DNA of 64,000 nt, taken from the NCBI RefSeq assembly GCF_963921235.1, contig NC_086106.1, positions 22,010,001 through 22,074,000 of the forward strand. Reading direction: 5' to 3'. Made by a program: the position numbers and the translations under genes. The first letter of the stretch is position 1; every line of letters starts with the position of its first letter. Of this stretch, positions 2,081 through 51,059 are shown one piece after another. The DNA is from Mobula hypostoma. Taxonomy: Eukaryota. The notes beneath the pieces are model-generated. The model saw nothing but the letters and a program-made list of their open reading frames with translations, was not told the DNA's origin and made no database searches.

Positions 2081-2084
2081 CATC

Positions 2085-6530: not shown

Positions 6531-7329
6531 CATGACAGAGCACCATATACAATATACATCCTGAATTTATTTCTTTTTCGCAAACATCCACGAGAACAGA
6601 TCAGTGCCCCCAAATAATGAATGACAGATACATATTAGAAACCCATCCACCGCCGCTGTCACCTGCCACACTCATAAGCAGCAGTAAAGGAAAGCAATGA
6701 CCCCCACACCTCCCCCAACAGAATAGAAGCATCTGCACCCTTCACCAACACTCAGCGTGCAGCAAAGCATCAATAAAGACACAGACTTGCAGTACCTCAA
6801 AGAATACTCATTCACCCGTTTCACTCTTTTTTTCCTTCCGATCTCTGTGCCCAAAGAACTCGGGTCTCTGGCCACATAACCGCAATTAGTTCGTGCTTTC
6901 AATCTTCCATGTACTTCCACGACAGATCAGGCGGCGGCACCGGCCTCTAATCTGTTCGCCTCCAGAGCCACGAAAAATCGGCACCTTGAAGGCGCGCTAA
7001 TCTTCAAGGCCGCGTCCTCAGCATATCAAACAGCGGTTGTCGTGAGGCCCTGATAACATGTCCTATTTCCTCAAAGAAAAGAATTCAGCGTGTATCTTCA
7101 GGTCAGGGTCTTCTGAAGAACCCTGAGAAAAGGGACAGGGAGCAACTGAAAGAATCATTAGAGGGGAAAATATGAAATATGAAAGGAAGCTAGAAAGCAA
7201 TATCAAGGTCTATAGAAAAAAAAAACATCTTCAAGTCTGAAATATGAAAGATAAATGACAGTGGATCTAGCACAGGTTGTATACGGGCCACATAATCGAT
7301 AACGGTAGAATTCGAGGCAATATGAACTA

Positions 7330-8120
7330 TGTAAGTTGGTATGCACCAATCTTCAGTGTGAAACAAGCTCGCTGGGCGTAGTTTTTGAAGGGTGTGAGGG
7401 AAGAGAATTAAGAACAGTTACTGTGCCAAGGGAGAATGTGCTCAAACTGCCGAAATACCTCAACCTGCATACCTCAAGTGGACCAGATGAAATGGACTGT
7501 GGAATTGTTCCAGCGGACTCGGAACTTTCAGATGTCACTCGACTCTTTTATGAAATAGAGAGGCAACAGTCAAGATATTTTACCCAGATGTCCTGACCAT
7601 ACTTGTTGGGAAGATGTTTTAATCAATTGTTAAAGATGAGCTTCTGGAGTACTTGGTAACACAGTACGTGACAAAGTCCGCATGGTTTCCTTTTTGGAGG
7701 AGTTTATAAGTGCGATGGATAAAGGGGATAATAAGGTGCCACAAAGGAAGCTGCTTCCTAAATTAAGAGGCCATGGTATTACTGACCATTTACTAGCATT
7801 GTTTAGGCATTGGCTGAATTGTAGATGGCATTAAGTGGGAATAAAATGATAATTTTCTCTTTGGATGCCTGCGGCTAGTGATGTTAAGCAGTGGTTGGTG
7901 TTTGTGCCCTGCTTTTACTATTGTATAGTAATGCTTTTGAGGGTGCCATAGATGGCTGTGTTGCTAGCTTTGCAGACGATACTAATACTGGTGGAGGGGC
8001 AGATACAGTTGGGGAAATAGGAAGAATGCAGAAGTACGCAGAGATTAGGACAATGGACAAGCAAGTCCCAAATGAAATATGATGCTGGAATATGTGTGGC
8101 CATGCACTTTCGTAGAATAA
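7330..8120 (+). mobile_element. Degenerate CR1 RT remnant
   Basis: VLKLPKYLNLHTSSGPDEM (compare KVDKSPGPD) and VASFADDTNTGG (FADDTK motif). Confidence 0.65.
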
Positions 8121-11100
8121 TTAAAAGTGCAGAGGGACAGCTGGAAGACCCGGAGTCCTGAGTCCACGGACCGGACCGCGAAACTGAACATGGAGTTCAC
8201 AGACCGTACCATGACAAAACCAATAAATAATCATTCGGGTCATGTCTCTTTTTTTTTGCTATTGCACATTACAGAACTTTTCAGGAGAGGCATGTTACAA
8301 TGTAAGCATCCTTAGTTTGTTTATCAGAAAGCTTGTGCGGTATCATTTCGAAAAACAGCGACCACAGTGTTACAAACCACAGCAAGGTTCGGGACGGCGG
8401 TCAAAGCGCTCGGTAGAGGGCTGATTTAGGAAGGTCCTGGTGTTCCTGACTCCTGTGTGTTTGTAATCTGTACGATGGCAGAGAGATCAGTAGCCATTTT
8501 CCATTGCTTCACTTCTCGCCTACAGACCCTATCTCTCTGCTGTCCCAGATCAGATCAAACGTCGTGTACAGTGTGTTCATCAATCCAATATGAGCACACC
8601 ATAAGGGCTACGAGCGAACTTCGTTGCAGGAAGACCAGAGACCTTGTCAACGCAAACATACTAAAAAATCAGTACAGATATTGCGCAGAGCAATTGCCAT
8701 GATCCTGTAGAAGTTGGATCTATCATAATACACAGAAGAGCTCGGTGTCAGTTTTACCGGACAAGTAATGACAACGACGAGCAAGCAGCGGAAGTACACC
8801 TAGATGTACGGAGTAATGCAGAACATTGAAAATCCGCTGCGAATGAAATTATTCCAAATCGAATAAAAGTCATGATTTGAAAGAATGCTTAAAATCCCAG
8901 TGATACCAAAGGAGAAACCTACAAAGCAAGTTGAAAAACAGAGCTCGCCCAAATGCAAACAGTGACATGAAATGCAAACAATCTCAAGAGCACTTCATAG
9001 CACTAAGTGAATTTTAGAAGGAGTCCACATAGTAGGAGGCAAAAAAAAAACGGTTTTATTTCATACTTGATCTCGTTGTGACGATTTTCCAAATCTCTAC
9101 AACGCCACATCACAGAATACCTCTGAGTTGCCCGAAGATGCTTGCCATTGGAAAAAAAAAATAGTGCGCTTGGATTTATCTATTGATCGTGTTTTATCAG
9201 GTTGAGTTGCGATAAAATATAGACAGTAATTTAGTGATACTCTCCAATAAATAGGAAGATTCAAACTACCGTAATCGACAAAGGTGAGGTTCACCACTGA
9301 AGTCGCCACTGCATTTCCAGCCTCTTAAATCGCTGTACTTGCCCAGAATGAGTGTCAATTCTCCGATCTCCAACTCCCATCAGCATTGCTTTCTCCTTCA
9401 TGAACGCCAAGCCACCTCCCCCCTCCCCAACACCTCCCCCTCCCACATTTGTGTAGAACGGAATCCGTGACGACACAATGGACAGACATTGATTTCCAAC
9501 TTATAATTGTAAACTGAGATTTTTTTTTTTTTTTTTGTTCATGATGGACCTCTTGAATCTGTACACAAATATATTTCAGAGCACTGGCCCTCTCAGGAAT
9601 ATGTGGAAACAATAAATTAAATGTGACTGCATGCCGTACTTTTAACTCGATATTGGCGCTGATGCTTTACAATAGCTCAGAAAAACTGAAGGTTTTGTTG
9701 CTATTATCGTTTTTTTTTTTTTTCGTTCTCAGTGTCTGAGGCATCTGACTTAATTGTCAACAGTAATCATCCAGTACTGATGGATAGTGGACAGCTTGAT
9801 ACAACTTCTTAATGACCAAAAATGTCATCATGCTTGGAACTGAAGGACCAAGATTTGCAGACACGAAATCTAAAAGGCAATGTTCAACATTATATTTACT
9901 CTTTTTTACTATCATTTTTCGCTTCGGTTCTGATTGTTCGAATGATGTTGTCAATGAGCTGCACGTACTATGGTTATCTGTAGTTTCCAAGAAAATAATC
10001 AATGACACGCTTGCATGTCTTCCATGCAACCATCTGCGACACGACTAGGAATTCGTCGAATTGCCTGCCATTGTCAAATTGCTTGATTTCTGGTCCACAG
10101 AACAAGCCTTATCTATTCGTGGCATCTGTTATTCTGACAGAAAACATGAACTGAAATAACAAATATACAGAGGCAAATTTAACGACGTGAACATTCCAGG
10201 GATAAACAACCAACCAAATTCTATAAGGGATGGAGGGGAGTGGAACGTCGAATCAGACCATGAGAGGCCTGCGTCAGGCATTTTCATGCCTTACAAGGCA
10301 CACATTGGAAGTCGGTGTGGGGCGCCACTCCTCGCATAGACGGTAGAGCAATGTGTGGTTAACTGCCCTGCTCAAGAATACAAACACACTGCCACAGCTG
10401 AGGCTCGAGCAAGAGAGTTTCAGATCACTAGTCGAACGCCTTGCCCACTTGGACACATGTCAAAAACAATTCTATGATATGTACACAAAATCGTTCAGAA
10501 AGCAAAGTCTTTGCTCAGCCGTGTTTTCTGTCTTTGCGAAAGAGACGGAAGCACTCTAAATCTATAACTCTGCACGTATGTTCATGGGGATTTTAAATGT
10601 TTCGTTTATAGTCACTGATGTGAGGGAAAACCTTTGTTCCTTCATGTTACATGTTCATTGTTTTGATCCATGCTACTCCAGTCTGAAGACAAGTTGTAAT
10701 CCCAAGAATGACTTACAAATGATGTTTTGTCTCAGTGAAGTTCACTTCCATCTTCGATACTTTAATCGCTATTTACCTTCGGTGTTTCACAATATCACCC
10801 GAGGCTACTCTTAATCTCTTCATATACAGTCCTCGCATTGGCCGATATATTCCATTTCAAATGAATAAACGGATACAGTCAGAAACTGACGCGACATGAT
10901 ATCATAACTTACTGTGGTTTGCTGTCGATTGAGTCGGGTGATAGCAGAAGCAGTGCACTATGTACTGTATATTATTCATTATATGTACTGTACTGAGCAG
11001 TAATTAAACACATACCTTTCAACATATGGAAACGTGTACGTCTCTATTTCTGCTTAATTTTATTATTAGACCATTTCTGAGCACTATTAAAAAAGGAATC

Positions 11101-11589
11101 ACATAGAATAACGATGATAAGGGGAGAAATTGTCTTCCATTATTTTATCCTTGTCAGTTTCCTCCTGGTGCTGTCGCGAAATGTTGTAAATTTTCTACCT
11201 GTGCAAATTGCAGCAATAAATTTGACAACATATCTGTCACAGGAATAAATCCAATTGCAATAACGGAAAAGTAGCTACAAAGAAAGCAGATAGTCGTTGA
11301 TGCCTTTCGTTTCCCGAAAATATCCATGATGTTATGCTACCCCTGAATGTGGAACAGAATGAAATGTTGTTGGTAATTAATGTAACAATATGACATGTTT
11401 CTTCTGTTGTACCGCGCTTGGAGCAGAAGAACCAGAATTATTATCAGTTATTCCTTACATCCTTACAACCCCTTTTCACAGAGGTATAGGAACAGAGAAG
11501 AAATACAGCAAAATACAGAGCCTTCAGCTAACAATGCCTTTCCGAACATGTACCTATTTTCGAAATTTCCAAGTTTACACATAGCCTTC

Positions 11590-14400
11590 TACTTTTCCAA
11601 GCGCTATGTACCTATTCAGGCACTCTTATAAATACCCCATCATATCCTGCTCAACCACAACGCCGTCAGCCCATACCACGCAATCGCCACCCTCTGCGTA
11701 AAAAAAAACTTACCCCTGCTATCCTTCCAAGTACTTCAAAACTGTGCCTTTCTCGTGATAGCCATTTCAGCCCGAGGGAAAAGCCCCTGACATCAAAACA
11801 ATCAAAGCCTTTCATCATTTTATACACGTATAATCAAGTCACCTCTCATCCCCCGTCGTTCCAAGGAGAAAAGGTCAAGTTCACTCAACCTATTCTCGTA
11901 ATCCATGCCCCACAATACAGGCAATAACCTTGTAAATCTCCTCCGCACCCTTGCTATAGATTCCACATCCATCCTGGAGTGAGGTGACCAGAACTGAGCA
12001 GAATACTCCAAATAGGGTCCGACCTGTGTGCCATATCGCTGTAACATTACCTCTCGGCTATTAAACTCAATCCCATGTTTGATGAATTGGAATGCGTATG
12101 TGTTCTTAACCACAGTGTCCACCTGCGCAGCAGCTTTGAGAATCCTGTGGAATCGTACCGAAAGAACCCTCTGATCCCACACACAGCGAAGAGTCCAACT
12201 ATTAATACTATATTCTGCCTCCATATTTAGCCTACCAAAATGAACCACTTCACACTTATCTGGGTTGAACTCCATCCACCACTTCTCAGCTCAGTTTTGC
12301 ATCCTATCCATGTTCCGCTGTAACTTCTGACAGTTCTCCAAGCAATCCACAATACCCCCAACCTTTATGCCATCAGGAAATTTACTGAACCATCACTCCA
12401 CTTCGTCATTCAGGCCATTCACTGTGAGACCTGACACCTAATCACGGTCATTTCCCAATACCATACCAAACATAGCCTCTCCTGTCGTCGGCTTATCAAC
12501 ATATTTTGTCGGGATCACCTTGCTGACACACCAAACAAACCCACCCTATCTAAACCCCTTGCTCTAGGGAAATGCAAATCAATATTTGGGAGCTTAAGAT
12601 CTGCCACCACGACAACCCTGTTATTATTATAGCTGTCCAGAATCGGTCTCCCTACTCTCTTCCTCAAATGTCCTTATTACCATTTGGTCGACTACAAAAA
12701 TCACCCAGTAGAGATATTGACCACTTCCTGTTTCTATCATACAACCACATAAACTCAGTAGACAAATCTTCCATGATTTCCACATTTTCTGCAGGGGACA
12801 TTATCTCTGATTATCAGTGCGACTCCCACACTTATTTTGCCTTCCTCCCTGTACCTTATGAAACATTTAAATCCTGGCACTTTTAGTAATCATTCCATAG
12901 GCAATCGTGTTTCTTTCGTGTGTCCACAGTTTCGCTGCCTGACCTCTTAACTATAGAGTTCCTTGTCAATGACGCCTTCTTCATTTCCCAACCCCTCTCA
13001 GCCCCAGGGCCAGGATCAGTGCCTGAAGCGCAGCCACATTTGCTTCCCCCTGAGCCATCCAAGTCTCTGTAATGGGCCCAACATCATAGCTGTAAGTTAA
13101 TGCGCTTAATTCATGATGCTTCTTGCATTAAAACAGACACATATCAAATAATCATTCGGACCGTATCCCTTCTTGATCATCTCCCCATTTTCCCTCTCGC
13201 ACCTTCTCCACTATTTTTCTATATGTGAGCCCAACGCCGCTAGCCCCGTCTCTTCAGTTCGGTTCCCACCCCTCAGCAATTCTAGTTTAAACTCTCCCCA
13301 CGGAGCAAACCTCCCTGCCGTGATCGTGGTCCTCGCGGATTCAAGTGCAAACCTTCATTTTTGCAAAAGACATACCTGATCTCAAAGACTCCCAATAATC
13401 ATAAATCTGAATGCCTGCCCCTGTTTCAATCACTCAACCGCGCGCTTATCCCCTACCTCGCTCAATTCTCATACTCACGGTCGCGTGGCACAGGCAGTAA
13501 TCCCGAGGTTACTACATATGAGGGACTGCTTCTCTACTTACTTCCTAACTCTCTATCGTGGTGTTCGGGACATTCTCTTATGTCCTACCTATGTCGTTGG
13601 TACCAAATACCGCTGGTTGTTCACCTGCCCACTTCAGGATAGCGTGGACGCGATCACAAACATCCCGGTCCCTGGCTACTGGAAGACAAACTGCTATTCG
13701 TGTTTGTTTATTATTTATTTGTTTTTTTGTGTATTTGTGTGTGTCCAGAGATTCGCTGCCTGATCTCTTAACTATAGAGTCCCTTATTAATGTTGCATTC
13801 TTCCTTTCCCTACCCCATGAGTCACAGGTCCAGACTTAGTGCCTGAGGCGCGGCCACTTTCGCTTCCACAAGGTATGCTTTCCACCCCTCCACCGTTACT
13901 CAAACAGGGGCATATATTTTTAAAGGGGGCATCAACAGGGGTACTTTCTACTAACTGACTGCTGCTGTTCCCTCTCCTGACTTGCACACTTATCTGTATT
14001 CCGATGCCCCGGTGTAACTACTTGACTATAGTTCCTTTCTATCATCTCACTTTCCCTGAATAAACGAAGGTCATCGAGCTGCATCTCCAGTTCCCTCAAC
14101 CGGTCCCTAAGGATCTGCGGCTTGACGGAACTGCGGCAGATGTGACCGTTGGGGAAGCTGGGTGTGTCCCGGATATCCCACATTTGACACTCAGCACTGA
14201 ATATCGGTCTCACAGTCATACTGATTGTTTCTATTCCGAACAGGTAACTTACCTCTCCTCGACCCGTTATTGCCGAGGCCAAATGAGCCAAAGCCATGCC
14301 ACTCTGCCTCAGATCACTCCATCAAAGACCGATCATTTGACAACCGCTCCGCTAGGTAGAGTCTCCCTTTTATGCCTGAAACTTCTCTGCTGTTTACCTT
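11590..14400 (-). mobile_element. CR1 LINE, internally deleted and decayed (ORF1 fragment, endonuclease fragment, RT C-terminus)
   Basis: MEFNPDKCEVVHFGRLN...YSAQFWSPHSRMDVESIARVRRRFTRLLP (11820-12275). ORF1 CQMWDIRDTPSFPNGHICR...LEMQLDDLRL (13932-14297). Confidence 0.85.
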
Positions 14401-14425
14401 ACGATTTTTGTTCCGGTTAGAGCTG

Positions 14426-14650
14426 CTGATAGGCCAGATACAATAATCTAACGATCTCGAAGCTCTTTTTTTTCTTTTCAATAACCGCCGTCGAACCGCG
14501 AGAAATTGCTCTTGGAAAAGCTTTCTTGACGCACTGCTAGGCCACGTACAATGCACTAACATACTCGAAGCTCCCTTTGTTTCAAATAACTGCAGCCGAC
14601 CTGAGAAAAATCCCTCTTGATAAAGCTGCCTTGACGCCACTGATAGGCCA
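14426..14650. repeat. Diverged tandem repeat, about 107-bp period (two units plus start of a third)
   Basis: Units begin ctgataggcca (14426), ctgctaggcca (14534) and ctgataggcca (14640). Shared internal blocks: tacaat..ctaac..ctcgaagctc, and ctcttg..aaagct..cttgacgc. Confidence 0.7.
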
Positions 14651-14699
14651 CTTCCCTTTCGGCGTCCTTTCTGCACTTATGGGTGCGCATTTTGTTCAT

Positions 14700-17400
14700 C
14701 AACGTGAGTACTGATTAGTGCGAGTTTAATAATGTGATAATATGATATGTGTTTTTAAACAAACATTCGGATGATCTTTTTCGCTCCTTTCCTGATTTTT
14801 CTTTGCCGTTTTGCAACAGTTTTGCTTTATTTTTAGGAATTTTACGAAAACTGTTGTAAGGTAGTAATACTTACAGAAGGCGTTAAGTATTTTTTTAAAT
14901 ATGTGTTTGTCAATATTATCGGTGCCAGGACGATTACAGGTGTGAGTATTTTTTATTTTTATATAAGCGTTTTTTTTTACATCAGATATTTGCATATCTT
15001 CAATTTTATGTGTGTTGAGTACCTGCCTAATCAAGCATGTCTCTTGATCATGAGGCCTGTTACCGGTCCAGATTTTAAACATGGAGTACACAATCTCTGT
15101 GTTGGTGAGTAATGCATTGCTCCGGTTGCTAGCGTGTTGATGATTAGAATTTTGTACCAACGTCCAGTATAAATACGTTGATGGAGATTGTCAGTAACCT
15201 TACTCATTTTATTTCAAGCAGGAGAAAAGAATGGCAACTGGACTTGCTGCATTGTCCAGAAATGTTTTCGCCACTTATTAGAGAGGCTTCTTCAGTTCAT
15301 CCCATGGCCTGTAGATTTCAACGTTATGTGTGTTCGTCCACTGTCGACGTCGATGAGGACCTCAACACCATTATGATGGCGTCGAGCCTAGCGCGTCATT
15401 TGGATTTCAGTGAGGGAGAGTTGTGTAGCGTCAGCCTTGCTCTATCTTCCCAATTCCCATCTGGATCCAGTGGCGAGACAGAGTCGCGGAGGCTGGAGAT
15501 GGGATTAGGCGCAGTGGATCACCAGGACCTGATCTGTGTCTTCTCCTGCTCTACACGTACACGACTCTTGCAGAGACCGCCTTTTTTACCGTTGGGCCTT
15601 CCATTAGTCTCGTTCGCTCAGTCCGCCAGAGTCTGCCTTCGCATGCTAGAAAAGACAGCTCCCAATCTCACCGAGGGTTTGAGAGCCGTCGGCTACCCTC
15701 ACTTGGTTTAGCCGACATGGCGAAGCCGTTGGCCGTGGTGTGGCCGCTGTCGCATGCAAACAACTACGGGGAGCCACAGGTCAGAAATGAGTGCCAGTTG
15801 GGGACCAAATGTGGACGAACCGCCTTGAAAAGGACGTGACCTGTTTCCGCACCAGAGGTGTTATCCCTCCCTGTCACCCCATTACCTCAGATTTCAACGA
15901 TATAAAGCTATAACAATCACATGAGCATTGCTAAGAATCTCGAACGTGATGAGAGGGTCATTAATCTCATTAATCTTTCGATGAATAGGCATGTTTCCAT
16001 GCTGTGCAGATTTCGGGGAGAAGATTTAGGACGGCATTGTAAATAGCTGAAAGGTGATATCGAACCTTAGTTTGACGAATATGACTGATTTAACCCCTCT
16101 TTCAAACCACCTGCCGTCCCTGTCCCAATTATGGACATTGCTATCATTAAAGATTGTGTTCAGGCAGGACAACTGGTTACAAAGCCATTTTGCCATCTTT
16201 GTCAAATTGGAAAACCCATCCTTGAACAAAGGTCGGTGTGAGGTGTAATTGTTGATCTTTCATCAACTCACAGAGTTCATAAGCGGAAGAAATACCCACC
16301 ATGGATTTAATTCCTATTCTCTTCCCTCTTAACTTTTCTCCTGTCATTATCCCTTTTATAAACCATTTGGTTTCCTACGCATGCTCTTAAAGTGTTGTTA
16401 TTGTTTTTTTTTTCTGAATCTATCTGCTCTTTACTGCTCTCCTTTCTTAATTCAGTGCCTCTGTCGCCACTGCATCACACTGCTGAAAAGGCTGTGCAGT
16501 AAGTTATTGTGTGATTTTGCCTAGGGCTGCAAATGTGTAATTATTCCCCTACATATTGTCATAATGTACTATTCTTCAGACGATTGACAATTTCCGCCAA
16601 TGTTGATGACGTGGTGGTGTCTTTTTCAATGATCATTGTCATTTCAATCAACAATTTAGTTGATGGCATCTTGAATATTTTAATTGTTATCACTCTATGT
16701 TGTTCGGAGCTTCGTTGTGCAGTTCATTGCATGAAAGGGTATTGTTCTCTGAACTGTTAATGACTTTTTTTTTACTGTATGTTGTCATATTAACCTCGCG
16801 TTGCTTTACTCGAACAAAATAGAGGCAGAATAAACGTGCTAAGTTCTAATGAGTATTTCGTGCTTGTTTTCTTCGCTCTTAAACGCTTCAATGCTTTCAA
16901 TTGCATGCGGACTTCTGCCCTGAGAAAACTTGCAATTGTCGCAGCTTGAGGTGTTGGTGAGCCACGTTGAATGCCGGCTGCATCTTTCTCCAATTTCCCG
17001 GTGACTGTTGGTCTACTCAACAGTTATCCGCGAGCAGCTTGATTACAGCTAAGCCCAGTGTTAGCCCTAGTTCTATAATAATGAGAGCATCCCGAATCAC
17101 GTTTAAATACCGTTTCTGTCTCAGCGTTAATGTTTTGGTGTGCCACACTTGTTCCACGATCAGCAATACCCTGAGGTATAAGAATAACGAATATAATGTA
17201 TATATTTTGAAATATATTAAATATCCTCTCATTTACTTAAACTATTTTTTTCTCATAGACACCAATTACTTCCTTCTTTGTCAGAGCCATTTCCATCCTC
17301 ATTTGTCTGCATTGCCTGGAGCCTCTCTTAAATCATGTAACCAACTAATTTGCATTCCTGTGTATCGTCGCTGATGTAATTTACGTTGAGTTGTCATTTG
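14700..17400 (-). mobile_element. Highly decayed L1-like LINE remnants
   Basis: AEVRMQLKALKRLR..KYSL (16790-17020) resembles an L1 ORF1 C-terminus. NWDRDGRWFERGVKS (16026-16229) resembles an L1 ORF2 C-terminal region. No long ORF survives. Confidence 0.4.
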
Positions 17401-18046
17401 GGTGCAGGCGAGATCACACCCCGTACATTCCTCACAGCTCAGTAGTGGATAGCAGAATCGGAGGGAGTTGATAAGCTTTTCTACGAGACGAAAATACCAG
17501 GGAAAAAGAGAGATTATTCGTTGATAAAACTTGTTTGATTTTTTTTTGTTTGTTTTTTTTTAACATTTGCAATTGGCCTCGTCTAATCGAGAAACAATTA
17601 TGGAAATGTAAGAATTCCACAAAGTTACTGCCTTTTATGTTTAACTGCAGAATAAGTGGAGATTAGTAATCTGTTTGGGCTTCGTATCCAATTTTGTTCA
17701 TATTATCTTGTTCGCAAGACGTATTTCTAGCTGTCTGAAAATTGGATTTATAGTCTTCTCTGTTCCCCTGTTTATTCACTAGGGTGAAATATTACCAAAT
17801 GAAAGGGTTTGAAGTAAGCGAACACCTCCACGTTGAAGACAGAGAACAATCTACACAACCCTAACAAAACAGTCCACATGAATGTTTTACGTGATTATTT
17901 CACCAGACAAAATGTTGTTACGTTCTCTGTTTTATCGGAGACCAAGTTAAGATCAGGTTCATTATCACTGGCAAATGTGGTCGACATTGCGGCAGCATTG
18001 AATTTAAATATAGAGTAATAATCTTGTGAATAATTCTGTGAAATGC

Positions 18047-18049
<3 letters not shown>

Positions 18050-18122
<73 letters not shown>
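18050..18122. repeat. Compound microsatellite (GT)n(GA)n
   Basis: Directly visible. Confidence 0.95.
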
Positions 18123-18126
<4 letters not shown>

Positions 18127-19159
18127 ATTACTTAGTTTTCATAGATTCATTGTCCATTCATAAATCTGATAGCGGTGTCAGGAACGTGTTCCTGACTCGG
18201 GGAATGTTTGCATTCAAGCACCTGAACTCCTTCTTGATGGCAAAACTGACAAGTATGCAAGTTCTTTCAGGGCGATGCACACCCTTAATGTTGGAAGCTG
18301 CCTTTCTGATGCATCAGTCCTGAAGATGTCCAGGGCGATGTCTGGGCCAGTGCCCGCGATGGAACTGAGTGGCTTTACAACTTTCTGCAGCTTAGATCGA
18401 GCACTTGCATTTGCTCTTCCATCGTAACAGACGCTGATGCATTTCGCTATAATGCTTCCCCGGATATCTGTAGCAATTAGAAAGTATCTTTCACAACCAC
18501 GATTTCAGCAGAGCAGCAGATACGGCAATTGCGCTCGTGAATATGCAAGTGTCAGCTGATGGTTACTTCTTTGTGATAGTATTTAACTCCATTCATTATA
18601 TCGTTCTATTTGCCGAGGCTTGGACACGGACACAGCAACGTTTGCAGCCTGCATTCTGCCTCGCCTGAAAAATTGTACAGTCATGTCAGCTGACTCTGAA
18701 GACTAAGGGTATTCGATTTATTCTTAGTAGTTCTTCTCTACCGCAGTGTAGCTAGTTCACCGTTTGAGACTTTTAGCTAACGGTACCGCATTGGCATGGA
18801 GTTCATTGTTTTCTTTTCCCTTTAACTCTGTTCGCATTAAAGTCTGTGAAATATCGACGTACTTCAGTGTCTTTCCCTCCGCACGTGGACCATATCCGAA
18901 CTGCTTACAGTATCTTTGGAAACATACAAAATCTCCTCGACCTGTCGTCCTTTCTAAATAACTGCTTCAATATGCTGAGGCAGATTAGATCCCCAGAGAT
19001 AATGACACAATGGGGCTTGCATTTAAGTCAATTTTCCAGTTGTGATTCGAAAATAACAAACTGTCTATGTTTATTCGTCTTACCCTTTCCGAAGCCCACG
19101 TTCCATTCATTCATCTTACAGACGATGAGAGCAGTTTTGTTGCTGCGACGCAACCCAAC

Positions 19160-20190
19160 TAGCTTCTTTCATTTCAAATCTTTTTATTGTATATAGGAAA
19201 AATAACGAGTAAATCGAAGTAACAACACATAAAATGCCTCATAAAAACATAATCTTAAAGACGGAAAACAATGTTTTGTGATAAGAAAAAAAAACGTACA
19301 CTGCAGAAAAGTGAGAGAAAAAAAAAAGTGAGAATCCATTAGGAGTACATTCCGGAGCTATGCGTCATACAAAAAGCTTCTAACAAAAAAAAAACAAAAA
19401 CAAAAAAAAAAAAACGCCATCAAGAAAAGAAAATATACTAAAAAGGATTATAATTAGATCTTGGAAAAACTGTACCAACTCAAATGATAATAACGAGCAA
19501 ATGAGTCCCATCTTTTCTCAAAAAATCAAATAAAGATTCAAAGATTCGACTTCTCATTTTCTCCTAACTAAGGCATAGCATCACTTGAGAGAACCATTGT
19601 GACAAAGTGGATGCAGAAATACCAAGAATATTTTGATGAACTGTTCCGAAAAGGACAGTTAATCTATTAGGTTGTAAATTATTTTTAAGCGTTTTAGAAA
19701 TTGTTGAGAAAACCAACTTCCAGAACTGTTCCAATATGGAGCAAGACCAAAACATATGTGTCAGTGTAGCTATCTCAGTTTTACATCTATCACAATGACT
19801 ATCAGCATACGGAAATGTTTTAGAAAGTCTGTCCTTTGTCAAAAGATAACGATGTACAATTTTAAATTGAATCAATGACTGGGTAGCACAAATTGAAGAA
19901 GAACTAACCAACTTCAATATCCGCATCCAATCCTCCGTCATAAAAGTCAAATTAAGTTAACTTTTCCCAATCCGGTTTAATCTTAGATAAAGGACGCTTA
20001 TCCCATTGTAATAATAAATTATGAATTCTTCCAATAGAACCCTTAATCAAAGGATTCATACTCATAACAGTATCCAACCCAGCTAGCTGATATAGTGGTT
20101 GAGCCCAGGGGCTTTTCAGCAATGAGCCAGATTTCCTGAGACAGATACGGTAGAAGATCCTTTTCTGAAAAATCATCATAATATGGCCTA
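19160..20190 (-). mobile_element. L1-clade LINE 3' fragment (ORF2 C-terminal cysteine-rich domain and 3'UTR)
   Basis: ICATQSLIQFKIVHRYLLTKDRLSKTFPYADSHCDRCKTEIATLTHMFWSCSILEQFWK (19564-19950). AATAAA near the 3' end at about 19183-19188 on the minus strand. Confidence 0.85.
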
Positions 20191-20309
20191 ATTCACCCTA
20201 ATCCTTGAGACTGAGAAGCACAATTCATAAGTATCAGTATTAGGTTTGAATAACAAAAAAAAATATGGAGCTATGAGAGACGGTAAAGATGTAATACAAA
20301 AGTAAGCTA

Positions 20310-20940
20310 AGAAATAAAATTGAATAATTAAAGCACATTTCTTCAGGTATAATAATTTTAAACGAGAGACAAGAGTGGAAAACGATGCCAGAGAGGTTGC
20401 AATGTACAACAGTGAAATGACGAACGACCTGCATAAGTATTTTGCAACAGTATTCACTATGGAAAATACTAGCAGTATGTTGGAATTTCCAGGAGTCCGT
20501 AGTCATGAAGTCTGTGAAGTTACCATTACCTCAGAGAAGCTACTTGGAAACTGAAAGATCTGAAGGTAGATGCTACTTGGAACAGAGTCTGTACACACAA
20601 GCTTTCTGAGAATGGTCGCCTCAGAGATTGTGGAGGCATTAGTAATAATATTATAAGAGTCGCTTGGCTCTGAAAAAGTTCTGCAAGACTGTAATGCAGC
20701 AAAAATCGCTGTACTCTTCTGTAACGGAGAGAGCAGCGGAAAGGATATGATAGGACATTTTGTTTGAGTTCAGGTCTGAGCCTTTCGGCGAAGATGTTGC
20801 AGAAGATTATTAAGGATTAGCTCTCAGGTTTATGGCAGTAATCTTTGCTCCTTAAGGCAAAATCTGGCAAATCTGTAGCAATTAGTTGAAGAAATAACAG
20901 GCAACATATACACAGTAGAATTGATCAGAATCGTGCGAAT
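20310..20940 (+). mobile_element. Degenerate CR1 ORF2 fragment
   Basis: Nucleotide similarity to the CR1 at 55900-56400: 'ttgcaacagtattcactatggaaaatac' and 'gagattgtggaggcattagtaataata'. Confidence 0.55.
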
Positions 20941-22358
20941 CAAAATGAGGTTTATTATCAGGGGCATGTGTCGTGTAAAGTGTTAACTTAGCAGCAGCAG
21001 TTCATTGGAATTCATTAGCGAAAGAATGAAAACATAATAATATAGCATTAATAATAAAAATGAAATAAGTACATTAATTTCAGTATACGTGTATTCAATA
21101 GATTAAAGTTTTTGCAAAAACAGAAAATAAACATATATATATAATGTGAGGTGATTTTCACTGTTTCAATTAGAAATAGGATGACAAAGCTGATTTTGAA
21201 TCCCTGCTTTGTACCTCTGACCCAACGGAAACAGCGAGAAAACGGCATGTCCCGTGTGCTTGAGGTACTAAATAATGGACACTGCCTTTTTGAGACACCT
21301 GTTTGTGAAGGTGTCCAAGGTACATTGTAGGCACCTACCAGGGATGGAGCCGATTCAATTTACAACATTCTGCAGCATCTTTCGCTCCTGTGCAGTAGCC
21401 CCTCCATACCAGACAGGGATGAACCGGTCGGAATGCGCACCACGGTTCATTTATTTAAGTTGTTGAGTGTATGTATTGATATATCAAATCTCTTCAAACT
21501 CCTAATGTGTGGTAGTCGCTGTCTTGTCTTCTTTATAACTGCGTCGATATGTTGCGACCAGTCCACAGAGATCTTGACTGCCAGGAATTTGAAACTTATC
21601 AGTCTCTCCACTGTGATCCTTCAATGAGGATAAAAAATACAGTAGACTTTACGAGCAGTGCCCTTTCGGCAGGAAGAAGGGTCTCAGCCCGGAAAGTCGA
21701 ATTATTATTTTTTTTTTTTTAGATGCTGCCTTGCCTGCTGAGTTTCTTCAGCATTGTATGTCGGTGTGTGTGTGTGAGGGGATGAAAATTTCTAAAACAC
21801 TGGTGAACCTCAACTGGAATACCGCGAACAGCTGTGGACCTCTCATCTTGATGGCTCTGGCCTAATTTCAACACCTTTCAAAAACGGCGAGGGAGTGAAT
21901 ATGCAGAGGACGTATACTTTGTTGGCAAAGTTTAAAATCGGAGTCCGCAGCCTAATAATATATTGCCGTCCTTGAGAACGGAAATGAAGAAGTATCTCTT
22001 GATCCAGAGATTGCCTTGTCTGTGGAATTCTTTTCACAGTCTGTTGTGGAGGTCAGCTCTTCATGTGTATTTAAGTCTGGGGTTGATAGATCATTGTTTG
22101 GTTAGGGCATGAAGGGATACAGCAACAGGCAAGATATTAGAGATGAGTGGAAAAAAAAAACAGATTAACCATAATGAAATGGAAAAGCATACTCGATGAG
22201 CCAAATGGCTAAGTTGTGCTCCTAATCTTATTGTCATATGGTCGAAATCTTTCTCCTGTACGCCATACTGTCGTTTTGTGAAAATTTCCAAAAAACAGCT
22301 GTATCGTTAGCAAACTTTTAAGGACATTTAAGGTACTCCCAGTCATACAGGTATTGGG

Positions 22359-23078
22359 CAGAGTGCTAGAGCAGAGTATTAAGTACACATCGTTTGCATG
22401 CGGCTGCGTTTATTGTGAGCGAGGTAAATAACTTATTTCGGATTGGTACAGACTGCGTTGTTCCGGGGTGATTTTCTCTGATCCTATTGCAGGGTGAGAC
22501 GCAGAAGCATAAGCTTTGGAGCTTTTTGATTAGATCTGTAGTCATGATCACGCTTAAGGTTGAGCTGTTCTGAATAATCTGCATAAATATTGGTATTATC
22601 CGGGTGATTCAAGTCCGCAAATATAACAATTAGATTGCCTCCATTCCAGGCAAATTGTATCGATAGGCAAATTACAGTTGTTCCTGGGTCTCAGAAATCG
22701 AAGACGAAAAGCCTCTGGAGGTCCGAAGCGGCGACATGCAAATTATTCGACTAATATGGCGTTGTATTTTACATTTAGCACGCACACTATATTCATCTAA
22801 TGCTCATTAAGAGAAGCTGCATCAGTGCGAATTGATTTGCTATTGATGGAGGAGGGACATCGACTTGCTCTTCGGAGCTCAGATTGGTTCACGATGGACA
22901 TATGTAGTAGTGACTCCTTAAAATAAACTCAGTCTGGCATTGTGTCATAGGATCGAAAAGGATGTAGACAGGGGCAATTTAGAACCCAAGTAAATAGAAT
23001 AATGTTTATGTATTCCGTGGGGATTTCACCTGAGACGGAGTGCAATATCAGTAAAGACAAATTTAAAATTTTGCCTAT
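22359..23078 (-). pseudogene. Candidate heavily decayed TCR V pseudogene (leader-like exon plus V remnant)
   Basis: Leader-like 49-nt block 23078-23030, (ATA)GKILNLSLLILHSVSG, followed by donor gtgaaa. FR2-like HDYRSNQKAPKLML at about 22550-22505. FR3-like KLFTSLTINAAAC-ND-V-T*YSAL keeps the register of LTIPAMRLYDMATYYCAV after two small indels. Then heptamer-like CACTCTG (22365-22359). No nonamer, both Cys lost or doubtful, FR1 spacing irregular. Confidence 0.35.
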
Positions 23079-24069
23079 CTCCTTCTTTGTTTCTGGTTGG
23101 CGATATTTAAGTAGCACATCATATCAGCACAGGTTCACTATTATAAAACAGAATTCGAAAAAAAAATGTCATGCCACATATTAACATAGGCTGGCGTATT
23201 TGATACCATCAGTATCGATCGAAGTGCTGTGTGATATAGGATTTGCCTTTCTAGACTAATTTTTACAGAAACACATCAAATATCTACACGGCCGACACGC
23301 CATAGCAACCGCTTCTCCCGTCGTGCTATAAATGGCAATCTGTTCTTTCTGTTTCTTGGTTACAACTGTGTTGCAGAAGAAGCCTTCCATTCCGAAGGTA
23401 TCTAAAATGATTTTCTTTTCAGGAAAACATTGCTCCTCTACCAACCTTACACTGGTTGATGAAACACTCATTCGCATCTTGTCCATACATCGCAAGCAAA
23501 CGACAAAACTAAGCAATTACCTTCTATTTGGGTTTCTATCTCACAGTCCCCACATCGAGAAAATCGTGTTTCTGTTATCTGCAGCTCTTTTCGCCATTTA
23601 ATGTACATGCATGCATGCATCAGATTTTTTTTTAATAAACTGTGACCACTTATACTAATTTCCAAGGGGTTCCCAATAACCACAGTAATTGCAACAGCTA
23701 TCCTTCATATACAAATTAGCAAATTACCTGGGACTTCCACAACCCAATATCAAGAAAATTCAATTCACCAACATCATTTAATTTGTAGCCGTGTTTTGTT
23801 CTTCTTCATTTTTTCTGCGCACAAGTGTTTCTGCACACTTGAAGGTCACTCGACACTTTTTTCCCCTTTTTTCCCCTTTCTATTACTAAATTTATTTGCC
23901 TTTCGCTGATACCAGAAAGCAATTTGTCTCTTTTCCAAATGTTCCATCTGCTCAGCCTCCATTTCTTTTCCAGAAGCCCACTCAACCTTTAAAAAAAAAC
24001 GATTTACTGAACCTGCAGTTAATCATAATAATCACCTTCATGTTCCCGCGTTGTCACCAGGCTTCCTTT

Positions 24070-27000
24070 TGTAACGCACATCTATATTGGCTCGTGTATG
24101 TCTAGGGGAAATCCCGCCCAACACCTGCCTGAACGCTTCCCACGGAGTTGGTTGCTGTACCGCTGCCGACCGAATCAATCCCAAACATCAATCATGAGCC
24201 AGCACACACAGTACGTTTTAACAAATACACTTTATAGATATTACTAAGTCTGTGAAAATAATGAAATTCGATACAGAAAAGGAAGTAATGGGGAAAATAA
24301 AAAACGCCAGACTTATCAAAGTCCAAGTTCTTCGTGCACCAGTTCGAGCTCAGAAATTCCTGACGACCACCCAGATCCTGTCGACTGACTGCTCAGGAAC
24401 ACCCGGAGTGATCGACCGGAGCTTTTTCGCCCGTCCGTGGTCCTCTCCGACTCTCCGCCAAAAAACCCCGTTCCCAATCATATGAGACAGCATTATCAGC
24501 CGAAAAAAGAACATGACAGAATGATCACCCATTGGCTAATAGCACCCTGCTCTCTGTATTAACCCAAGCAAATGTCTAGCTAGAGACTTTCTCAGCATTT
24601 AGCATAACATAGAAGCCATTTTAATCCACATACGCAGAAATTTAAAAGATTAACATAACAAAGAAGTCATTTTAAATTTAATATACAAAAAGAAAGAGAC
24701 CCCATACACTCTCCGCCCCACCAAATAAAAGTGATGCCCTCATGACGTTAACAGGGTTCACCAGTGCTCCCTGCAAAACACAAAACACAACCCAGATGCA
24801 TAAAGCAGTGACATAACTTCCCAGGACTGTAGCGATCACACCTTGTTTTGCCGGCGCTGTACAAGTCAACCTCTCCGAGGCGGGGGACTACTCCTCTGAG
24901 ACCTCTGTACTTCCTCTGCTGCCTCTTCCGGTTCAGACACCCCAGGGGACACCCCGGGCCTACCTGTCGGACCCTGACCCTCACGGCGAACCCTCAGCAC
25001 CTGTGAGCCCTCTGTCTCAGGTTCTGGCTCCACCCTCTCCTCTCCCAATCCCTGGTGTATTACATGCGGCTCTGCAACACCCTCCCTCCTCTCCTAACGC
25101 AGTGAAGGAAGGGCCAGGAGCCTCTTCTCCCGGCACCGGGGAATCATCGAACGGAAACAGGTAGCACACGTCCGAATCATCGTCTTCCCATGACGTATCT
25201 ATTTTCGGGGTGGGGACCGGCCCCGTCTCTTTCGCACTGGGCTCCTTCCGCTTCCCGCGCCCTCGCAGAGTCCTCGTAATAGGAGTAAACTCCCATTCCG
25301 GCTCTGGGTCCACCTTTACCTTTCGACCCAGAGGCAACAGGTGGTTCAGATGGAGTACCTTGACAGGCCCCATCCCGCCCTCTGGTCTCACCCGGTAACC
25401 AGGGAGATTTGGCAGCTGACTCTCCACCACATAGTGGGTGGCTGCCCAACGGTCCGCCTACTTGTGCTTACCCGGTAGTCCTAAATTCCGGATAAGGACT
25501 CCGTCTCCCGGCAATAGCTGGACGAACTTTACTTTCTGATAATACCTCTTCTTATTCCGCTGTTTCTGCTTGGTGGCCGCCGCCTCAGCCAACTCGTACG
25601 CCCTTTTCAACTGTCTCCTCATATTGGACACTTACTTCAGACATGGCTTCGAAGGTATTTAACCAGCTTCAGTCCCAAAATTCAGATCAATGGGCAACCT
25701 CGCTTCCCGTCCGAGCATTAGATAATAGGGCGAGTACCCCGTAGCGTCATTGCCAGTGCAATCGGAAGAGTGAACCAAATGGCCAATGTGCCGACTGTAC
25801 TTACTCTTCTCTGCGATCTCCAAAGTGCCGAGCAGGTCCAGCAGCGTCCGGCTAAACCTCTCGGGCTGAGGATCACCCTGCGGGTGAAAGGGGCTGTTTC
25901 TGGATTTCTCAACCCCAAGCATACCGAGTAATTCATGGATAAGCCTGGTCTCGAAGCCCCGTCCCTGATCACTATGGATCCGCCGGAGAAGGCCATAATG
26001 CGCAACGTACAAAGTACTCTCCCACAACACCTTAGCCGCTGTAGTCGCCTTCTGGTCCTTAGTAGGAAAGGGATGCGCATATCTAGCGTAGTGCTCCGTG
26101 ATGACAAAGACATTGGTGGTGTTGTTGGTGTCTGGCTCAATAGACAGGAAATCCAGACACACCATGTCCATGGGTCCCGCACTCTGCAAGTGGGACAAAT
26201 GGCCCGCCTGCGCAGGCAACGTCTTCCTCCTGAGGCAACGACTACAGGTCATGCAGTATTCTTCAACCCGCCCCCCCCCCCCCACCCCATCCGTGGCCAG
26301 TAAAACTGGCCCTTGAGTAATCCATAAGTCTTTTCTACCGCTACGTGCCCGGAATCATCATGTAGTGCCTGGAGCTGAGTCGTCCGATACTTCTCAGACA
26401 TGGCCAGTTTCCAGCGCCGTGGGTCGTCAAGCGGCAACGTGGTTCTTCAGCTTCAACCGAGACCACTCGTTCAGTAGTAGGGGAACGGAGGCATATTTCG
26501 CCTCTCCACCTGGGCCATATCCCCCTGTCTAACCGCGTACCAGATAGTAGCAATGCTCCGGTCATCACGCTGAGCAGTCCCCACTTCCTGGGGGCTCAAC
26601 TCCGGCAGCTGCCTGTTCCTCACTGCAGTTAAATTACAGTAAACAGTGGGTATCGCGTCATCGTCTACCCCAATTGATCCACTACCCGATCCGTCCCCAT
26701 CGGGGCTTCTGCTTCTCCGTCGCTCTCAACTTGACACCTGGCCTTTACTCCCGGGGCAGGGTCACTCTTCCACTCCTCAGCCGTGCCCGACTCGTCATGC
26801 ACCCGACGAGATCGAGAATCTGCATCGATGTTCCGACTCTCCGGCCGGTACTCAGGCTGAACTCACAGGCAGACAAGGCCGCTAATCACCGGTGCCCTGT
26901 AGCGTCCAGCTTTGCCGCGGTCACGATATAAGTGAGGGGGTTGTTGTCAGTTCTCACCTCAAACTGGGCCCCGTATAGATAGTCACTCAACTTGTCCACC

Positions 27001-27320
27001 ACCACCCATTTGAACGCCAAGAACTCCAGCTTGTGAGTGGGATAGATAGCGACAAGCTCCGGCTGACAAACACAACCGGCCTCAATCCGTTGCCCTGTGC
27101 CTGGTACAGCCCCCAGACCCTCGTGACTGCCATCAGTGTGCAGAACATATGGCTTCTGGGGATCAGCAAAAGCCAACACAGTGGCCTGTGTCAGCGCCCT
27201 TTTTAGAGATTGGAACGCCTCTTCACATTGAGCATCCCACCTCGTTTCAAAGGCTCCCACGGGTTCAAATATCATCCTGCCTCCGGCCTTCTGTCGCACT
27301 TCCTTTTCTTCCCCACAGGC
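24070..27320 (-). mobile_element. Gypsy LTR retrotransposon 3' half: RT end, RNase H, integrase and 3' LTR
   Basis: WDAQCEEAFQSLKRALTQATVLAFADPQKPYVLHTDGSHEGLGAV (26886-27299). Integrase GPMDMVCLDFLSIEPD...RRIHSDQGRGFE (25659-26285). Putative LTR 24863-24070 (minus-strand TGTACA...TTACA) preceded by a purine-rich tract. Confidence 0.85.
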
Positions 27321-28871
27321 GAATAATCACACAACAGCTGGTTCAATGGGCGACTGATTTTCGCATATCTTTTCATGAATCGCCGGTAATACCCACAAAA
27401 CTCAAAAAAAACGAGCATAAGGCGCTCACCTTCTGGGGTAAATATGTATTTATCAATAAACGGGGAATATTGTATTCCTAAACTGTGCGGAGAAGTGAAT
27501 ATGCTACTTTGCTATGTAAGTCTAGAGCAGAGAAGGTATTTTCAATCCGTGTTTTTGTGAATCTATAACTAAGATATATAAATTAAGGCAAATGGACCAA
27601 TAGTTGACGAAAAAATGTCAAGGGTTCCTTTCTGGGAGGAAACTCAAGTTTGTGCATTTAATTTTCTGCTCAGTAAATATAGTCGTCCGTATCATATTAT
27701 TAGTGGACCTGTGGAGGCAAAAGATATGAAACTTAAGGAAGGATATATGGTAAGATTCAGGTCTCAACTCAGTCAATATAAGATCAGTTTTCTGATTAGA
27801 CTAGTCTGACTGAACACTGTTCTTTTAACATGACTTTCGCGCAAGTGCAAGAGAAAGAATATATCTAGAAACGTTTATATCATTCATTATTTCGTTAATC
27901 TCTTTAAGTACACGTCAGTGCATGAAACCTCAGTAAAATGCAAGTACATAAACATTAGTTGAGACATATACATAAGTATGTTTAAGCGTACATCAGCATT
28001 AGGGTTACAGAAATGCAAACATTCTCACTTTAAACTTTCATTAATACAACAGACCATCATGTCCCTTTACTCTTATTATAGCATACACACAACCAAAATT
28101 ACCACACCTGTTGAATATTAACAGACAAATTTCAGAGCGGACATGTTTGGAAGTATGTGCACAAGGACACCAGTCTGTTGCACAAGTCCACGTACAGATA
28201 CACGTCGGTGAATAAATATAGAAACATGCATCCCTATGAAAAAAATATCAATATTCACATTAGCCTACACTGAAAGAAAATGCTTCATCGCAATTCCCGA
28301 CGGATGGATTTCGGACTGAGTCTTACAGCAGATACACACACATTTGATAATATACACAACATTTCACTAACTTATATTCAGCAAAAGCATTATCCAAATA
28401 GCACTATTTTACAAATTCCCCCTAATATCTACTTTAAATCGTAATGTTTTTTTTTCAAACTTAATTCGCTCTCTATTTCTGTACATCATATTGCGTCAAC
28501 GACTTCTCAGGTGTGAATTTTGAAAATTAATATTATCAAACGTAATAAACCAATGATCTATTGCGCACAACAACTTTCATATAACTCTCAGAAATAAAAC
28601 GTGTTAAGTCTTACACACAATGTTATACAAATAGGACTGTTCAAGAATAAGAACTTTATAAATTTAACAACTCATTCATTTTCTGTGCAATTCAGACATC
28701 AACTTCGAATTGTTTCAGCAACTAGTGTAAATGATTACATTGATACTGACATTTCATGGGAAATTAATTATGTAAATACAACTATATCGTGTATAAAATG
28801 AGCAAAATAAGAAATAAATAACATCCTGCAGTGACAACAACGTGAATATATGTCATTTCTGCTCTCGGTAG

Positions 28872-28999
28872 ATTTTGCTGAAGACATGCGGATTGAAGAC
28901 GATGGGGAAGACATAGACAACTTATGGACAATTGCCTCCACATTCATCATCCTGTTCTTCCTGAGTATTTCCTACAGCGCTGTCCTAACGTTAGTGAAG
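28872..28999 (+). CDS. IGH: Immunoglobulin heavy-chain transmembrane exon TM1 (isotype IgM/IgW/IgNAR unresolved)
   Basis: Acceptor tttctgctctcggtag then a phase-1 exon: (D)FAEDMRIEDDGEDIDNLWTIASTFIILFFLSISYSAVLTLVK, then donor gtgaga. It has an acidic spacer and the CART-type motif W..ASTFI.LF.LS..YS...TL.K of membrane Ig. 128 nt, no stops. Confidence 0.95.
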
Positions 29000-29138
29000 G
29001 TGAGAACATTTAGTTCACTTATCTTTCACGGCATTTGGAGATGATGACTAAATGTTCATGACGTTAACTTCTTGCGGGGGCTGAAATCTCACAACCATTA
29101 CTTCATTTGTATTTTCTCTATTTCTCTTGTTTTCACAG

Positions 29139-29147
29139 GTGAAGTGA
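29139..29147 (+). CDS. IGH: Immunoglobulin heavy-chain TM2 exon (VK*), giving the cytoplasmic tail KVK
   Basis: Strong acceptor tttctctatttctcttgttttcacag then GTG AAG TGA, after a 139-nt intron from TM1. This is the canonical M1/M2 organisation. Confidence 0.93.
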   Translation: MK

Positions 29148-29426: not shown

Positions 29427-29466
29427 CAACAACAACAACAACAACAAATAATAATAATAATAATAA
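29427..29466. repeat. Compound microsatellite (AAC)n(AAT)n downstream of IgH TM2
   Basis: Directly visible. Confidence 0.9.
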
Positions 29467-51020: not shown

Positions 51021-51059
51021 AGTTTTTGTACGAGGATAGAATCTGTTTCCACCACTGTG
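51021..51059 (-). other. 23-bp-spacer recombination signal sequence (V-RSS)
   Basis: Minus strand: CACAGTG (51059-51053), spacer gtggaaacagattctatcctcgt (23 nt), ACAAAAACT (51029-51021). It abuts the V coding end. Confidence 0.97.

What the first reader, a model, noticed from the sequence alone, without database searches (positions are those of the whole stretch)
28872..29147. Intact IgH membrane exons (TM1 and TM2, KVK tail) lying antisense next to or within a TCR alpha/delta V array, with no recognisable CH exons upstream
Seen in sequence: open TM1 and TM2 exons with canonical splice sites on the plus strand; TCR V genes on the minus strand at 51-52 kb and 63.8-64 kb, and perhaps at 22-23 kb; no CH, secretory tail, JH, DH or VH that I could identify in the 28.8 kb upstream. 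Established knowledge: cartilaginous-fish IgH genes occur as clusters, and shark TCR alpha/delta loci contain IgH-type V segments and NAR-TCR that join TCR delta rearrangements. Inference, three options: (a) an orphan remnant of an IgH cluster embedded in the TCR locus, directly recording Ig/TCR locus intermixing; (b) the end of a functional IgH cluster with a very long CH-TM intron, tail-to-tail with the TCR V array; (c) an anchor co-opted by another transcript. Intact frame and splice sites in otherwise decayed DNA suggest selection or recent origin. Deletional joining of the 51-kb V to any D/J lying to the left of it would excise these exons.
Basis: partly seen in the sequence, partly recalled or inferred. 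Interest (0 to 1): 0.8.

Follow-up and report, generated by a model that had tools for sequence, protein, structure and literature searches.

The report
IgM membrane exons beside TCR V genes
These are genuine membrane-anchor exons of an IgM-type antibody heavy-chain gene in a ray genome; their constant-region exons most likely lie left of the window across a long, transposon-filled intron, and finding T-cell-receptor V genes next to such a gene is already published for sharks and rays.

Summary
Window 28872-28999 (+) is an open TM1 exon with a phase-1 acceptor and a GT donor. Window 29139-29147 is a TM2 micro-exon reading Val-Lys-stop. The peptide matches only Ig heavy-chain membrane anchors and is closest to cartilaginous-fish IgM: 27/33 core residues against 16/33 for IgD-type. 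An intact V with a 23-RSS lies at 51060-51361 (-), and a degenerate V at 63801-63989 (-). No V fossil was found at 22-23 kb, and no CH exon was found anywhere in the window.

The "orphan" reading is probably wrong. An unchecked note from this scan places an IgM cluster, with a frameshift in Cmu4, 17 kb left of the window. If it lies on the + strand, the Cmu4-TM1 intron would be about 46 kb, against 3-10 kb in bamboo shark. That stretch carries Gypsy and LINE remnants. TM1 has evolved like working IgM TM1 exons (dN/dS 0.16-0.61).

Three small RNA runs show no transcript, and no canonical poly(A) signal follows the stop. The cluster may therefore be a recent pseudogene.

IgH clusters interleaved with TCR alpha/delta-type V exons were published for elasmobranchs in 2025. 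The scan has also noted Ig-TCR mixing elsewhere on this chromosome. This is an ordinary new member of a known layout, and interest is low.

The parts
28872..28999 (+). TM1 exon of an IgM-type heavy chain. It encodes an acidic extracellular spacer and the membrane helix, and enters in phase 1.
   Evidence: PDB mu-chain TM hits are. The 1.84-billion-protein search gave Ig heavy-chain anchors. The best match is the IgM-type protein P0021: all 44 residues align without gaps, and nucleotide identity is 81%. Core identity is 27/33 to IgM-type and 16/33 to IgD-type.
29000..29138 (+). TM1-TM2 intron, 139 nt, running gtgaga...ttttcacag.
   Evidence: The length is about the same as in the bamboo shark IgM gene, roughly 140 nt.
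29139..29147 (+). TM2 micro-exon: Val-Lys-stop, completing the KVK cytoplasmic tail.
   Evidence: It aligns to the bamboo shark IgM TM2, GTTAAGTGA.
1..28871 (+). Presumed 3' part of the Cmu4-TM1 intron. It holds no Ig exon and carries transposon remnants.
   Evidence: No CH, V or RSS was found here. Gypsy RNase H and integrase lie at 25662-27326 (-), a PNMA/gag-like ORF at 3989-4420 (-) and zf-RVT at 19567-19956 (-). Stretches at 11.5-14.3 kb are repeated inside the window. That this stretch is an intron is an inference.
51060..51361 (-). Intact V exon of TCR type (YLFWYRQ, YYCAV), entered in phase 1.
   Evidence: Pfam V-set E 5.9e-13. The named ESM Atlas neighbours include TCR beta, alpha, alpha/delta and gamma V clusters, alongside generic Ig-like and one IGH V cluster.
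51021..51059 (-). 23-bp-spacer recombination signal of that V: heptamer 51053-51059 and nonamer 51021-51029.
   Evidence: It is the only RSS in the window, against 0.17 expected in shuffles.
63801..63989 (-). Degenerate V of the same family, with no RSS, cut by the window end. Probably a pseudogene.
   Evidence: tblastn with the 51-kb V gives E 1.6e-6 and 32% identity.

Best explanation
The two exons are the membrane exons (TM1 and TM2) of an IgM-type heavy-chain minicluster. [quoted passage not shown] In a B cell the primary transcript would splice from a donor in or after Cmu4 into position 28872. TM1 would then splice to TM2, giving a membrane mu chain with the usual KVK tail that pairs with CD79. 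The CH exons are missing from the window because they lie to its left. The best lead puts Cmu4 about 46 kb upstream of TM1, so the Cmu4-TM1 intron would have been inflated by transposon insertions. The V genes at 51 and 64 kb are neighbouring TCR-type V segments on the other strand, not part of the Ig gene. The cluster may be a recently disabled copy. Shown here: the identity, type and intactness of the TM exons; the absence of CH exons in the window; the V and its RSS; and the transposon content. Inferred: the link to the upstream cluster, the intron length and the present activity.
For: TM1 matches only Ig heavy-chain anchors. It is closest to IgM-type anchors of cartilaginous fish, and it shares their ILFFLSI and TLVKVK signatures and their exact exon length. 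Where one protein carries both mu and delta anchors, the mu anchor always scores better: P0001, P0003 and P0012. Exon-intron geometry matches the bamboo shark IgM gene. Pairwise dN/dS of TM1 against three IgM TM1 exons is 0.16-0.61, inside the 0.27-0.51 range seen between working IgM genes. Bamboo shark Cmu4-TM1 introns are already 3.1 and 10 kb, and the longer one holds LINE-related sequence, so this intron tolerates insertions. The 28.8 kb upstream holds Gypsy and LINE remnants and no other recognisable exon. Lead only: scan note s1-144562 reports an 'otherwise intact IgM cluster' whose Cmu4 lies 17,061 nt before the window start. A published study reports TCR alpha/delta-type V exons between IgH clusters in sharks and a stingray (PMC12227049).
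Against: I could not read the DNA left of the window. The existence, strand and own TM exons of the upstream cluster all rest on an unchecked AI note. A 46-kb Cmu4-TM1 intron would be 4.6 to 15 times those measured in bamboo shark. None of the three small RNA runs listed for this species has a contig on TM1 or TM2, even at 80% likeness; their tissues are unknown. No AATAAA or ATTAAA follows the stop for 2.28 kb, whereas both bamboo shark IgM genes have AATAAA at +428 and +534. In the most conserved part of the helix the window copy has Ile, Val and Leu where the shark IgM comparators read Thr, Ala and Val (WTIAST and SAVLT in the window against WTTAST and SAAVT). No elasmobranch IgW or IgNAR membrane anchors were available for comparison.
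Confidence: 0.6

Rival explanations
1. Orphan remnant. The TM pair is all that survives of an IgM cluster whose V, D, J and CH exons were deleted or captured elsewhere. It would be a fossil of Ig-cluster turnover inside the Ig/TCR complex and would not be spliced to anything.
For: No CH exon lies within 28.8 kb upstream, while the bamboo shark Cmu4-TM1 spacing is 3-10 kb. No RNA was seen. No canonical poly(A) signal follows the stop. The conserved helix carries three unusual substitutions. A scan note reports C-less IgW-type V cassettes elsewhere on this chromosome, so partial clusters may exist here (unchecked).
Against: Frame, both acceptors and both donors are intact. dN/dS is as low as between working IgM genes, so any loss must be recent. 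A reported IgM cluster lies only about 46 kb upstream, which makes a separate lost cluster an extra assumption.
Confidence: 0.27
2. Co-opted anchor. The TM exons are used by a different upstream gene, for example a UrIg2-like non-rearranging receptor of the same complex or a TCR-type V transcript, giving a non-IgM protein with a BCR-type anchor.
For: UrIg2 maps to the same gene complex and has an IgM-like TM (PMC12227049). The exons look selected.
Against: [quoted passage not shown] This TM is 21-22/27 identical to shark IgM cores and ends in KVK-stop. No Ig-domain exon of any kind lies on the + strand upstream in the window. The TCR-type V genes are on the opposite strand.
Confidence: 0.05
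3. IgW or IgNAR membrane exons rather than IgM.
For: A KVK tail is shared by IgM and IgD/IgW-type chains. IgW and IgNAR clusters are reported on the same chromosome (unchecked). No elasmobranch IgW or IgNAR anchors were available for comparison.
Against: The best matches are all IgM-type. IgD-type anchors of tetrapods and lungfish match clearly worse: 16/33 against 23-27/33. The nearest reported Ig gene is an IgM cluster.
Confidence: 0.06

Closest known systems
Membrane exons (M1/M2) of vertebrate IgM heavy-chain genes, in particular shark IgM miniclusters. Comparators here: the Chiloscyllium punctatum genes encoding P0009 and P0017, and the Heterodontus francisci membrane-bound form P0036.
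   Same: TM1 has the same length (42 full codons plus a split codon). It enters in phase 1 and has the acidic spacer, the conserved helix, a TM1-TM2 intron of about 140 nt and a two-codon TM2 giving KVK-stop.
   Different: No Cmu4 lies within 28.8 kb, against 3.1 and 10 kb in bamboo shark. There is no canonical poly(A) hexamer where the bamboo shark genes have one. The window copy has Ile, Val and Leu where the shark IgM comparators read Thr, Ala and Val in the conserved helix.
The elasmobranch antigen-receptor complex (AgRC) described by Flajnik et al., Sci Adv 2025 (PMC12227049).
   Same: IgH miniclusters are linked to TCR alpha/delta, and TCR alpha/delta-type V exons lie between IgH clusters. 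That is exactly the neighbourhood seen here.
   Different: [quoted passage not shown] In the parts I read it does not discuss membrane exons or intron sizes.
UrIg2, the non-rearranging receptor gene of the same complex.
   Same: It has an IgM-like transmembrane segment and lies in the same chromosomal region.
   Different: Its TM is reported as only 50% identical to IgM and as followed by a cytoplasmic domain. Here the core is about 80% identical to shark IgM and ends at KVK.

Membership tests
IgM-type heavy-chain membrane exons | The TM1 peptide carries the conserved antigen-receptor transmembrane motif (W-T-x-A-S-T-F-I...L-S...Y-S...T-L-x-K). | tested here: met
   phmmer against the PDB gives mu chains at E 8e-7. 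The 1.84-billion-protein search gave Ig heavy-chain anchors, best E 5.9e-8. One motif position differs: Ile where the comparators have the second Thr.
IgM-type heavy-chain membrane exons | Two-exon structure: TM1 with a phase-1 acceptor and a GT donor, and a TM2 micro-exon encoding Val-Lys-stop. | tested here: met
   It aligns exon for exon with the bamboo shark IgM gene.
IgM-type heavy-chain membrane exons | Closer to mu anchors than to delta/W, upsilon or other isotype anchors. | tested here: inconclusive
   Core identity is 27/33 to the IgM-type P0021, 23-24/33 to shark and chimaera IgM, 16/33 to IgD-type and 18/33 to IgY-type. No elasmobranch IgW or IgNAR anchors were available.
IgM-type heavy-chain membrane exons | Lies downstream of Cmu1-4 on the same strand in one transcription unit. 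| not testable with these tools
   No CH exon lies in the window. DNA to the left cannot be read. The lead is note s1-144562.
IgM-type heavy-chain membrane exons | Spliced to Cmu4 in B-cell RNA. | tested here: inconclusive
   No contig of three small RNA runs of unknown tissue lies on TM1 or TM2.
Decayed orphan exon (pseudogene fragment) | Neutral evolution: dN/dS near 1, and broken frame or splice sites. | tested here: not met
   dN/dS is 0.16-0.61 against IgM TM1 exons. Frame and all four splice sites are intact. With only 42 codons the power is low.
TCR alpha/delta V gene segment (the 51-kb V) | V-set domain with Cys23, Trp41 and YYC, followed by a 23-RSS. | tested here: met
TCR alpha/delta V gene segment (the 51-kb V) | Groups with TCR alpha/delta V genes rather than Ig or other TCR V genes. 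| tested here: inconclusive
   The Atlas neighbours mix TCR beta, alpha, alpha/delta and gamma V clusters with generic Ig-like and one IGH V cluster. The PDB search was swamped by multi-domain scFv chains.
UrIg2 membrane exon | TM about 50% identical to IgM TM, followed by a cytoplasmic domain. | tested here: not met
   The core is 21-22/27 identical to shark IgM and a stop follows KVK directly. The description of UrIg2 comes from PMC12227049. I did not have the UrIg2 sequence itself.

The most novel reading that the evidence does not exclude
The TM pair is a true orphan that has been kept under selection because it is spliced to non-IgM upstream exons, for instance a TCR-type or UrIg-like V/C unit of the complex. 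The product would be a chimeric receptor carrying a CD79-coupling B-cell anchor.
Probability: 0.05. Interest if true: 0.75.

Novelty: new member of a known kind. Interest (0 to 1): 0.25.

Why it matters
If the main reading holds, this is one more IgM minicluster of a ray sitting among TCR-type V segments. It adds a devil-ray example to a layout published in 2025. It also shows that the Cmu4-TM1 intron, which membrane-versus-secreted RNA processing must cross, may reach tens of kilobases in a transposon-rich genome. That bears slightly on how poly(A)-site choice works in such genes. It does not open a new question. Only the unlikely orphan-but-used reading would be of wider interest.

Tried and rejected
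1. A search for short ORF relatives of the TM1 read-through ORF found nothing.
2. A word-indexed search with the TM region of a shark IgM returned only seven shark proteins and no ray proteins.
3. A full-length shark IgM query returned 106 Ig chains, none attributable to a ray by its source name. I therefore could not obtain this genome's other IgM, IgW or IgNAR anchors.
4. RNA: no run holds the stretch. Laying the three available runs at 80% likeness gave zero depth on the exons and signal only on a SINE-like repeat.
5. Typing the 51-kb V by a PDB search failed, because multi-domain scFv chains dominate the hits.
6. I searched for sequence conserved between the bamboo shark Cmu4-TM region and its downstream flank and the window. 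Only TM1 and shared LINE families matched.
7. I looked for a V fossil at 22-23 kb and for D or J signals. None was found.
8. I rejected chance as an explanation because of the E-values.
9. I rejected UrIg2 on TM identity and the KVK stop.
10. I could not reach the DNA left of the window with any tool.
11. A paper search for devil-ray Ig genes found nothing specific.

Full report
**What is in the sequence**

- TM1 occupies window 28872-28999 on the + strand. A polypyrimidine tract and AG precede an exon that enters in phase 1, runs for 42 full codons and ends at AAG|gtgaga.
- After a 139-nt intron with a strong acceptor (..ttttcacag), the nine bases 29139-29147 read Val-Lys-stop.
- The product is an acidic spacer, a membrane helix and a KVK tail.
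- phmmer of the 42 residues against all PDB chains returns only membrane IgM and IgG heavy chains from B-cell-receptor structures, best E 8e-7.
- phmmer against 1.84 billion representative proteins returns 15 hits; the matched stretches I could place are all membrane-anchor segments of Ig heavy chains, best E 5.9e-8. The exons are therefore real and not a chance match.

**Which isotype**

This is a 468-residue chain with four C domains and a TM, assembled from a public RNA run. All 44 residues align without a gap, and nucleotide identity is 81%.
- Core identity is 27/33 to P0021 and 23-24/33 to bamboo shark, catshark and elephant shark IgM. It is 16/33 to an IgD-type anchor and 18/33 to an IgY-type anchor.
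- The window copy shares the ILFFLSI and TLVKVK signatures of cartilaginous-fish IgM.
- Where one protein carries both a mu and a delta anchor, the mu anchor always scores better (P0001, P0003 and P0012).
- Aligned with the bamboo shark IgM gene, the splice sites, the TM1-TM2 intron length of about 140 nt and TM2 all correspond.
- I had no elasmobranch IgW or IgNAR anchors, so the IgM typing is strong but not complete.

**What is not there**

- tblastn with 15 and then 131 Ig heavy chains finds only TM1 and the 51-kb V in the whole window.
- A C1-domain HMM built from 65 CH domains was run without filters on all 1,626 six-frame segments and found nothing.
- The only recombination signal in the window is the 23-RSS of the 51-kb V.
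- The suspected V fossil at 22-23 kb does not exist.

**The neighbours**

- Window 51060-51361 (-) is an open V exon (Pfam V-set E 5.9e-13) with YLFWYRQ and YYCAV and a consensus 23-RSS.
- Its named Atlas neighbours include TCR V clusters of several chains, mixed with generic Ig-like clusters. It is TCR-type, but its chain is not resolved.
- Window 63801-63989 (-) is a degenerate relative without an RSS.
- The two V genes are convergent with the TM exons.

**Where the CH exons probably are**

- Notes of this scan are AI readings that I did not check and use only as leads. They call the genome Mobula hypostoma.
- They place an "otherwise intact IgM cluster" with a +1 frameshift in Cmu4 17,061 nt before the window start.
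- They place a TCR-delta D-J block 1.56 Mb to the left, IgW genes 2.2-3.6 Mb to the left, another IgM cluster 4.9 Mb to the right and IgNAR clusters 11-12.5 Mb to the right.
- If the nearby cluster is on the + strand, Cmu4 to TM1 would be about 45.9 kb.
- In bamboo shark the same intron is 3.1 kb in one cluster and about 10 kb in another, and the longer one already holds LINE-related sequence.
- The 28.8 kb upstream of TM1 carries Gypsy RNase H and integrase, a gag-like ORF, an RT zinc-binding (zf-RVT) ORF and stretches repeated within the window that also match LINE-like DNA of the bamboo shark loci.
- Another scan note reports a 25-kb transposon-filled TM1-TM2 intron in an IgW gene of this genome (unchecked).
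- A greatly lengthened intron is therefore plausible. It is simpler than assuming a second, otherwise vanished IgM cluster.

**State of the exon**

- Nei-Gojobori dN/dS of TM1 against three IgM TM1 exons is 0.16-0.61. Working IgM genes compared with one another give 0.27-0.51.
- The exon has thus been constrained for most of its history, although 42 codons give little power.
- Several points argue against present activity:
  - no RNA contig lies on the exons in the three small runs listed for the species, whose tissues are unknown;
  - no AATAAA or ATTAAA follows the stop for 2.28 kb, whereas both bamboo shark genes have AATAAA at +428 and +534;
  - the conserved helix has Ile, Val and Leu where the shark IgM comparators read Thr, Ala and Val;
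  - the reported Cmu4 frameshift.
- Together these fit a cluster that was disabled recently, or one that is simply not sampled in the RNA.

**Comparison with what is known**

- Flajnik and colleagues (Sci Adv 2025, PMC12227049) showed that IgM, IgW and IgNAR clusters are linked near TCR alpha/delta in three sharks and a stingray.
[quoted passage not shown] The Ig/TCR adjacency that made this finding look striking is therefore already described.
- The same paper describes UrIg2, a non-rearranging receptor of this complex with an IgM-like TM. That TM is only 50% identical to IgM and has a cytoplasmic domain, unlike the exon here.

**Verdict**

An orphan remnant stays possible at about 0.27. Co-option by another transcript is unlikely at about 0.05.
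- DNA runs of the same organism hold the stretch, but they are probably the assembly's own sample and give no independent support.
- This is a new member of a known kind, of low interest.
- The decisive steps are reading the 60 kb to the left and looking for Cmu4-to-28872 junctions in B-cell-rich RNA.

Noticed in passing
window 30128-30242: A repeat of about 115 nt, SINE-like by size and copy number. It matches other places inside the window. Its summed depth in all three RNA runs is enormous, up to about 55,000, from hundreds of diverged contigs. It is a very abundant transcribed repeat family.
   Followed up: no
window 25020-27326 (-): Remnant of a Gypsy-type pol gene with RNase H and integrase core domains. 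It lies 1.5 kb upstream of TM1. RNA contigs touch its edge at 27400-27513.
   Followed up: partly
window 29148-31433 (+): No AATAAA or ATTAAA follows the TM2 stop for 2.28 kb. The first ATTAAA, at 31433, lies in a stretch that is repeated within the window. An AATATA variant sits at +423, and a (CAA)n(TAA)n microsatellite at about 29424-29468. Bamboo shark IgM genes have AATAAA in similar sequence context at +428 and +534.
   Followed up: partly
L002 and L003 (Chiloscyllium punctatum IgM clusters): The Cmu4-TM1 intron is 3.1 kb in one cluster and about 10 kb in the other. The longer one holds LINE-related sequence of families also present in the window.
   Followed up: partly
window 3989-4420 (-): An ORF with a PNMA/gag-like domain. 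It may belong to the Gypsy element that a scan note places just left of the window.
   Followed up: no
window 51400-51450 (-): The only candidate leader exon for the 51-kb V is short and weakly hydrophobic (MLILFYV...). Whether this V is expressible is open.
   Followed up: no
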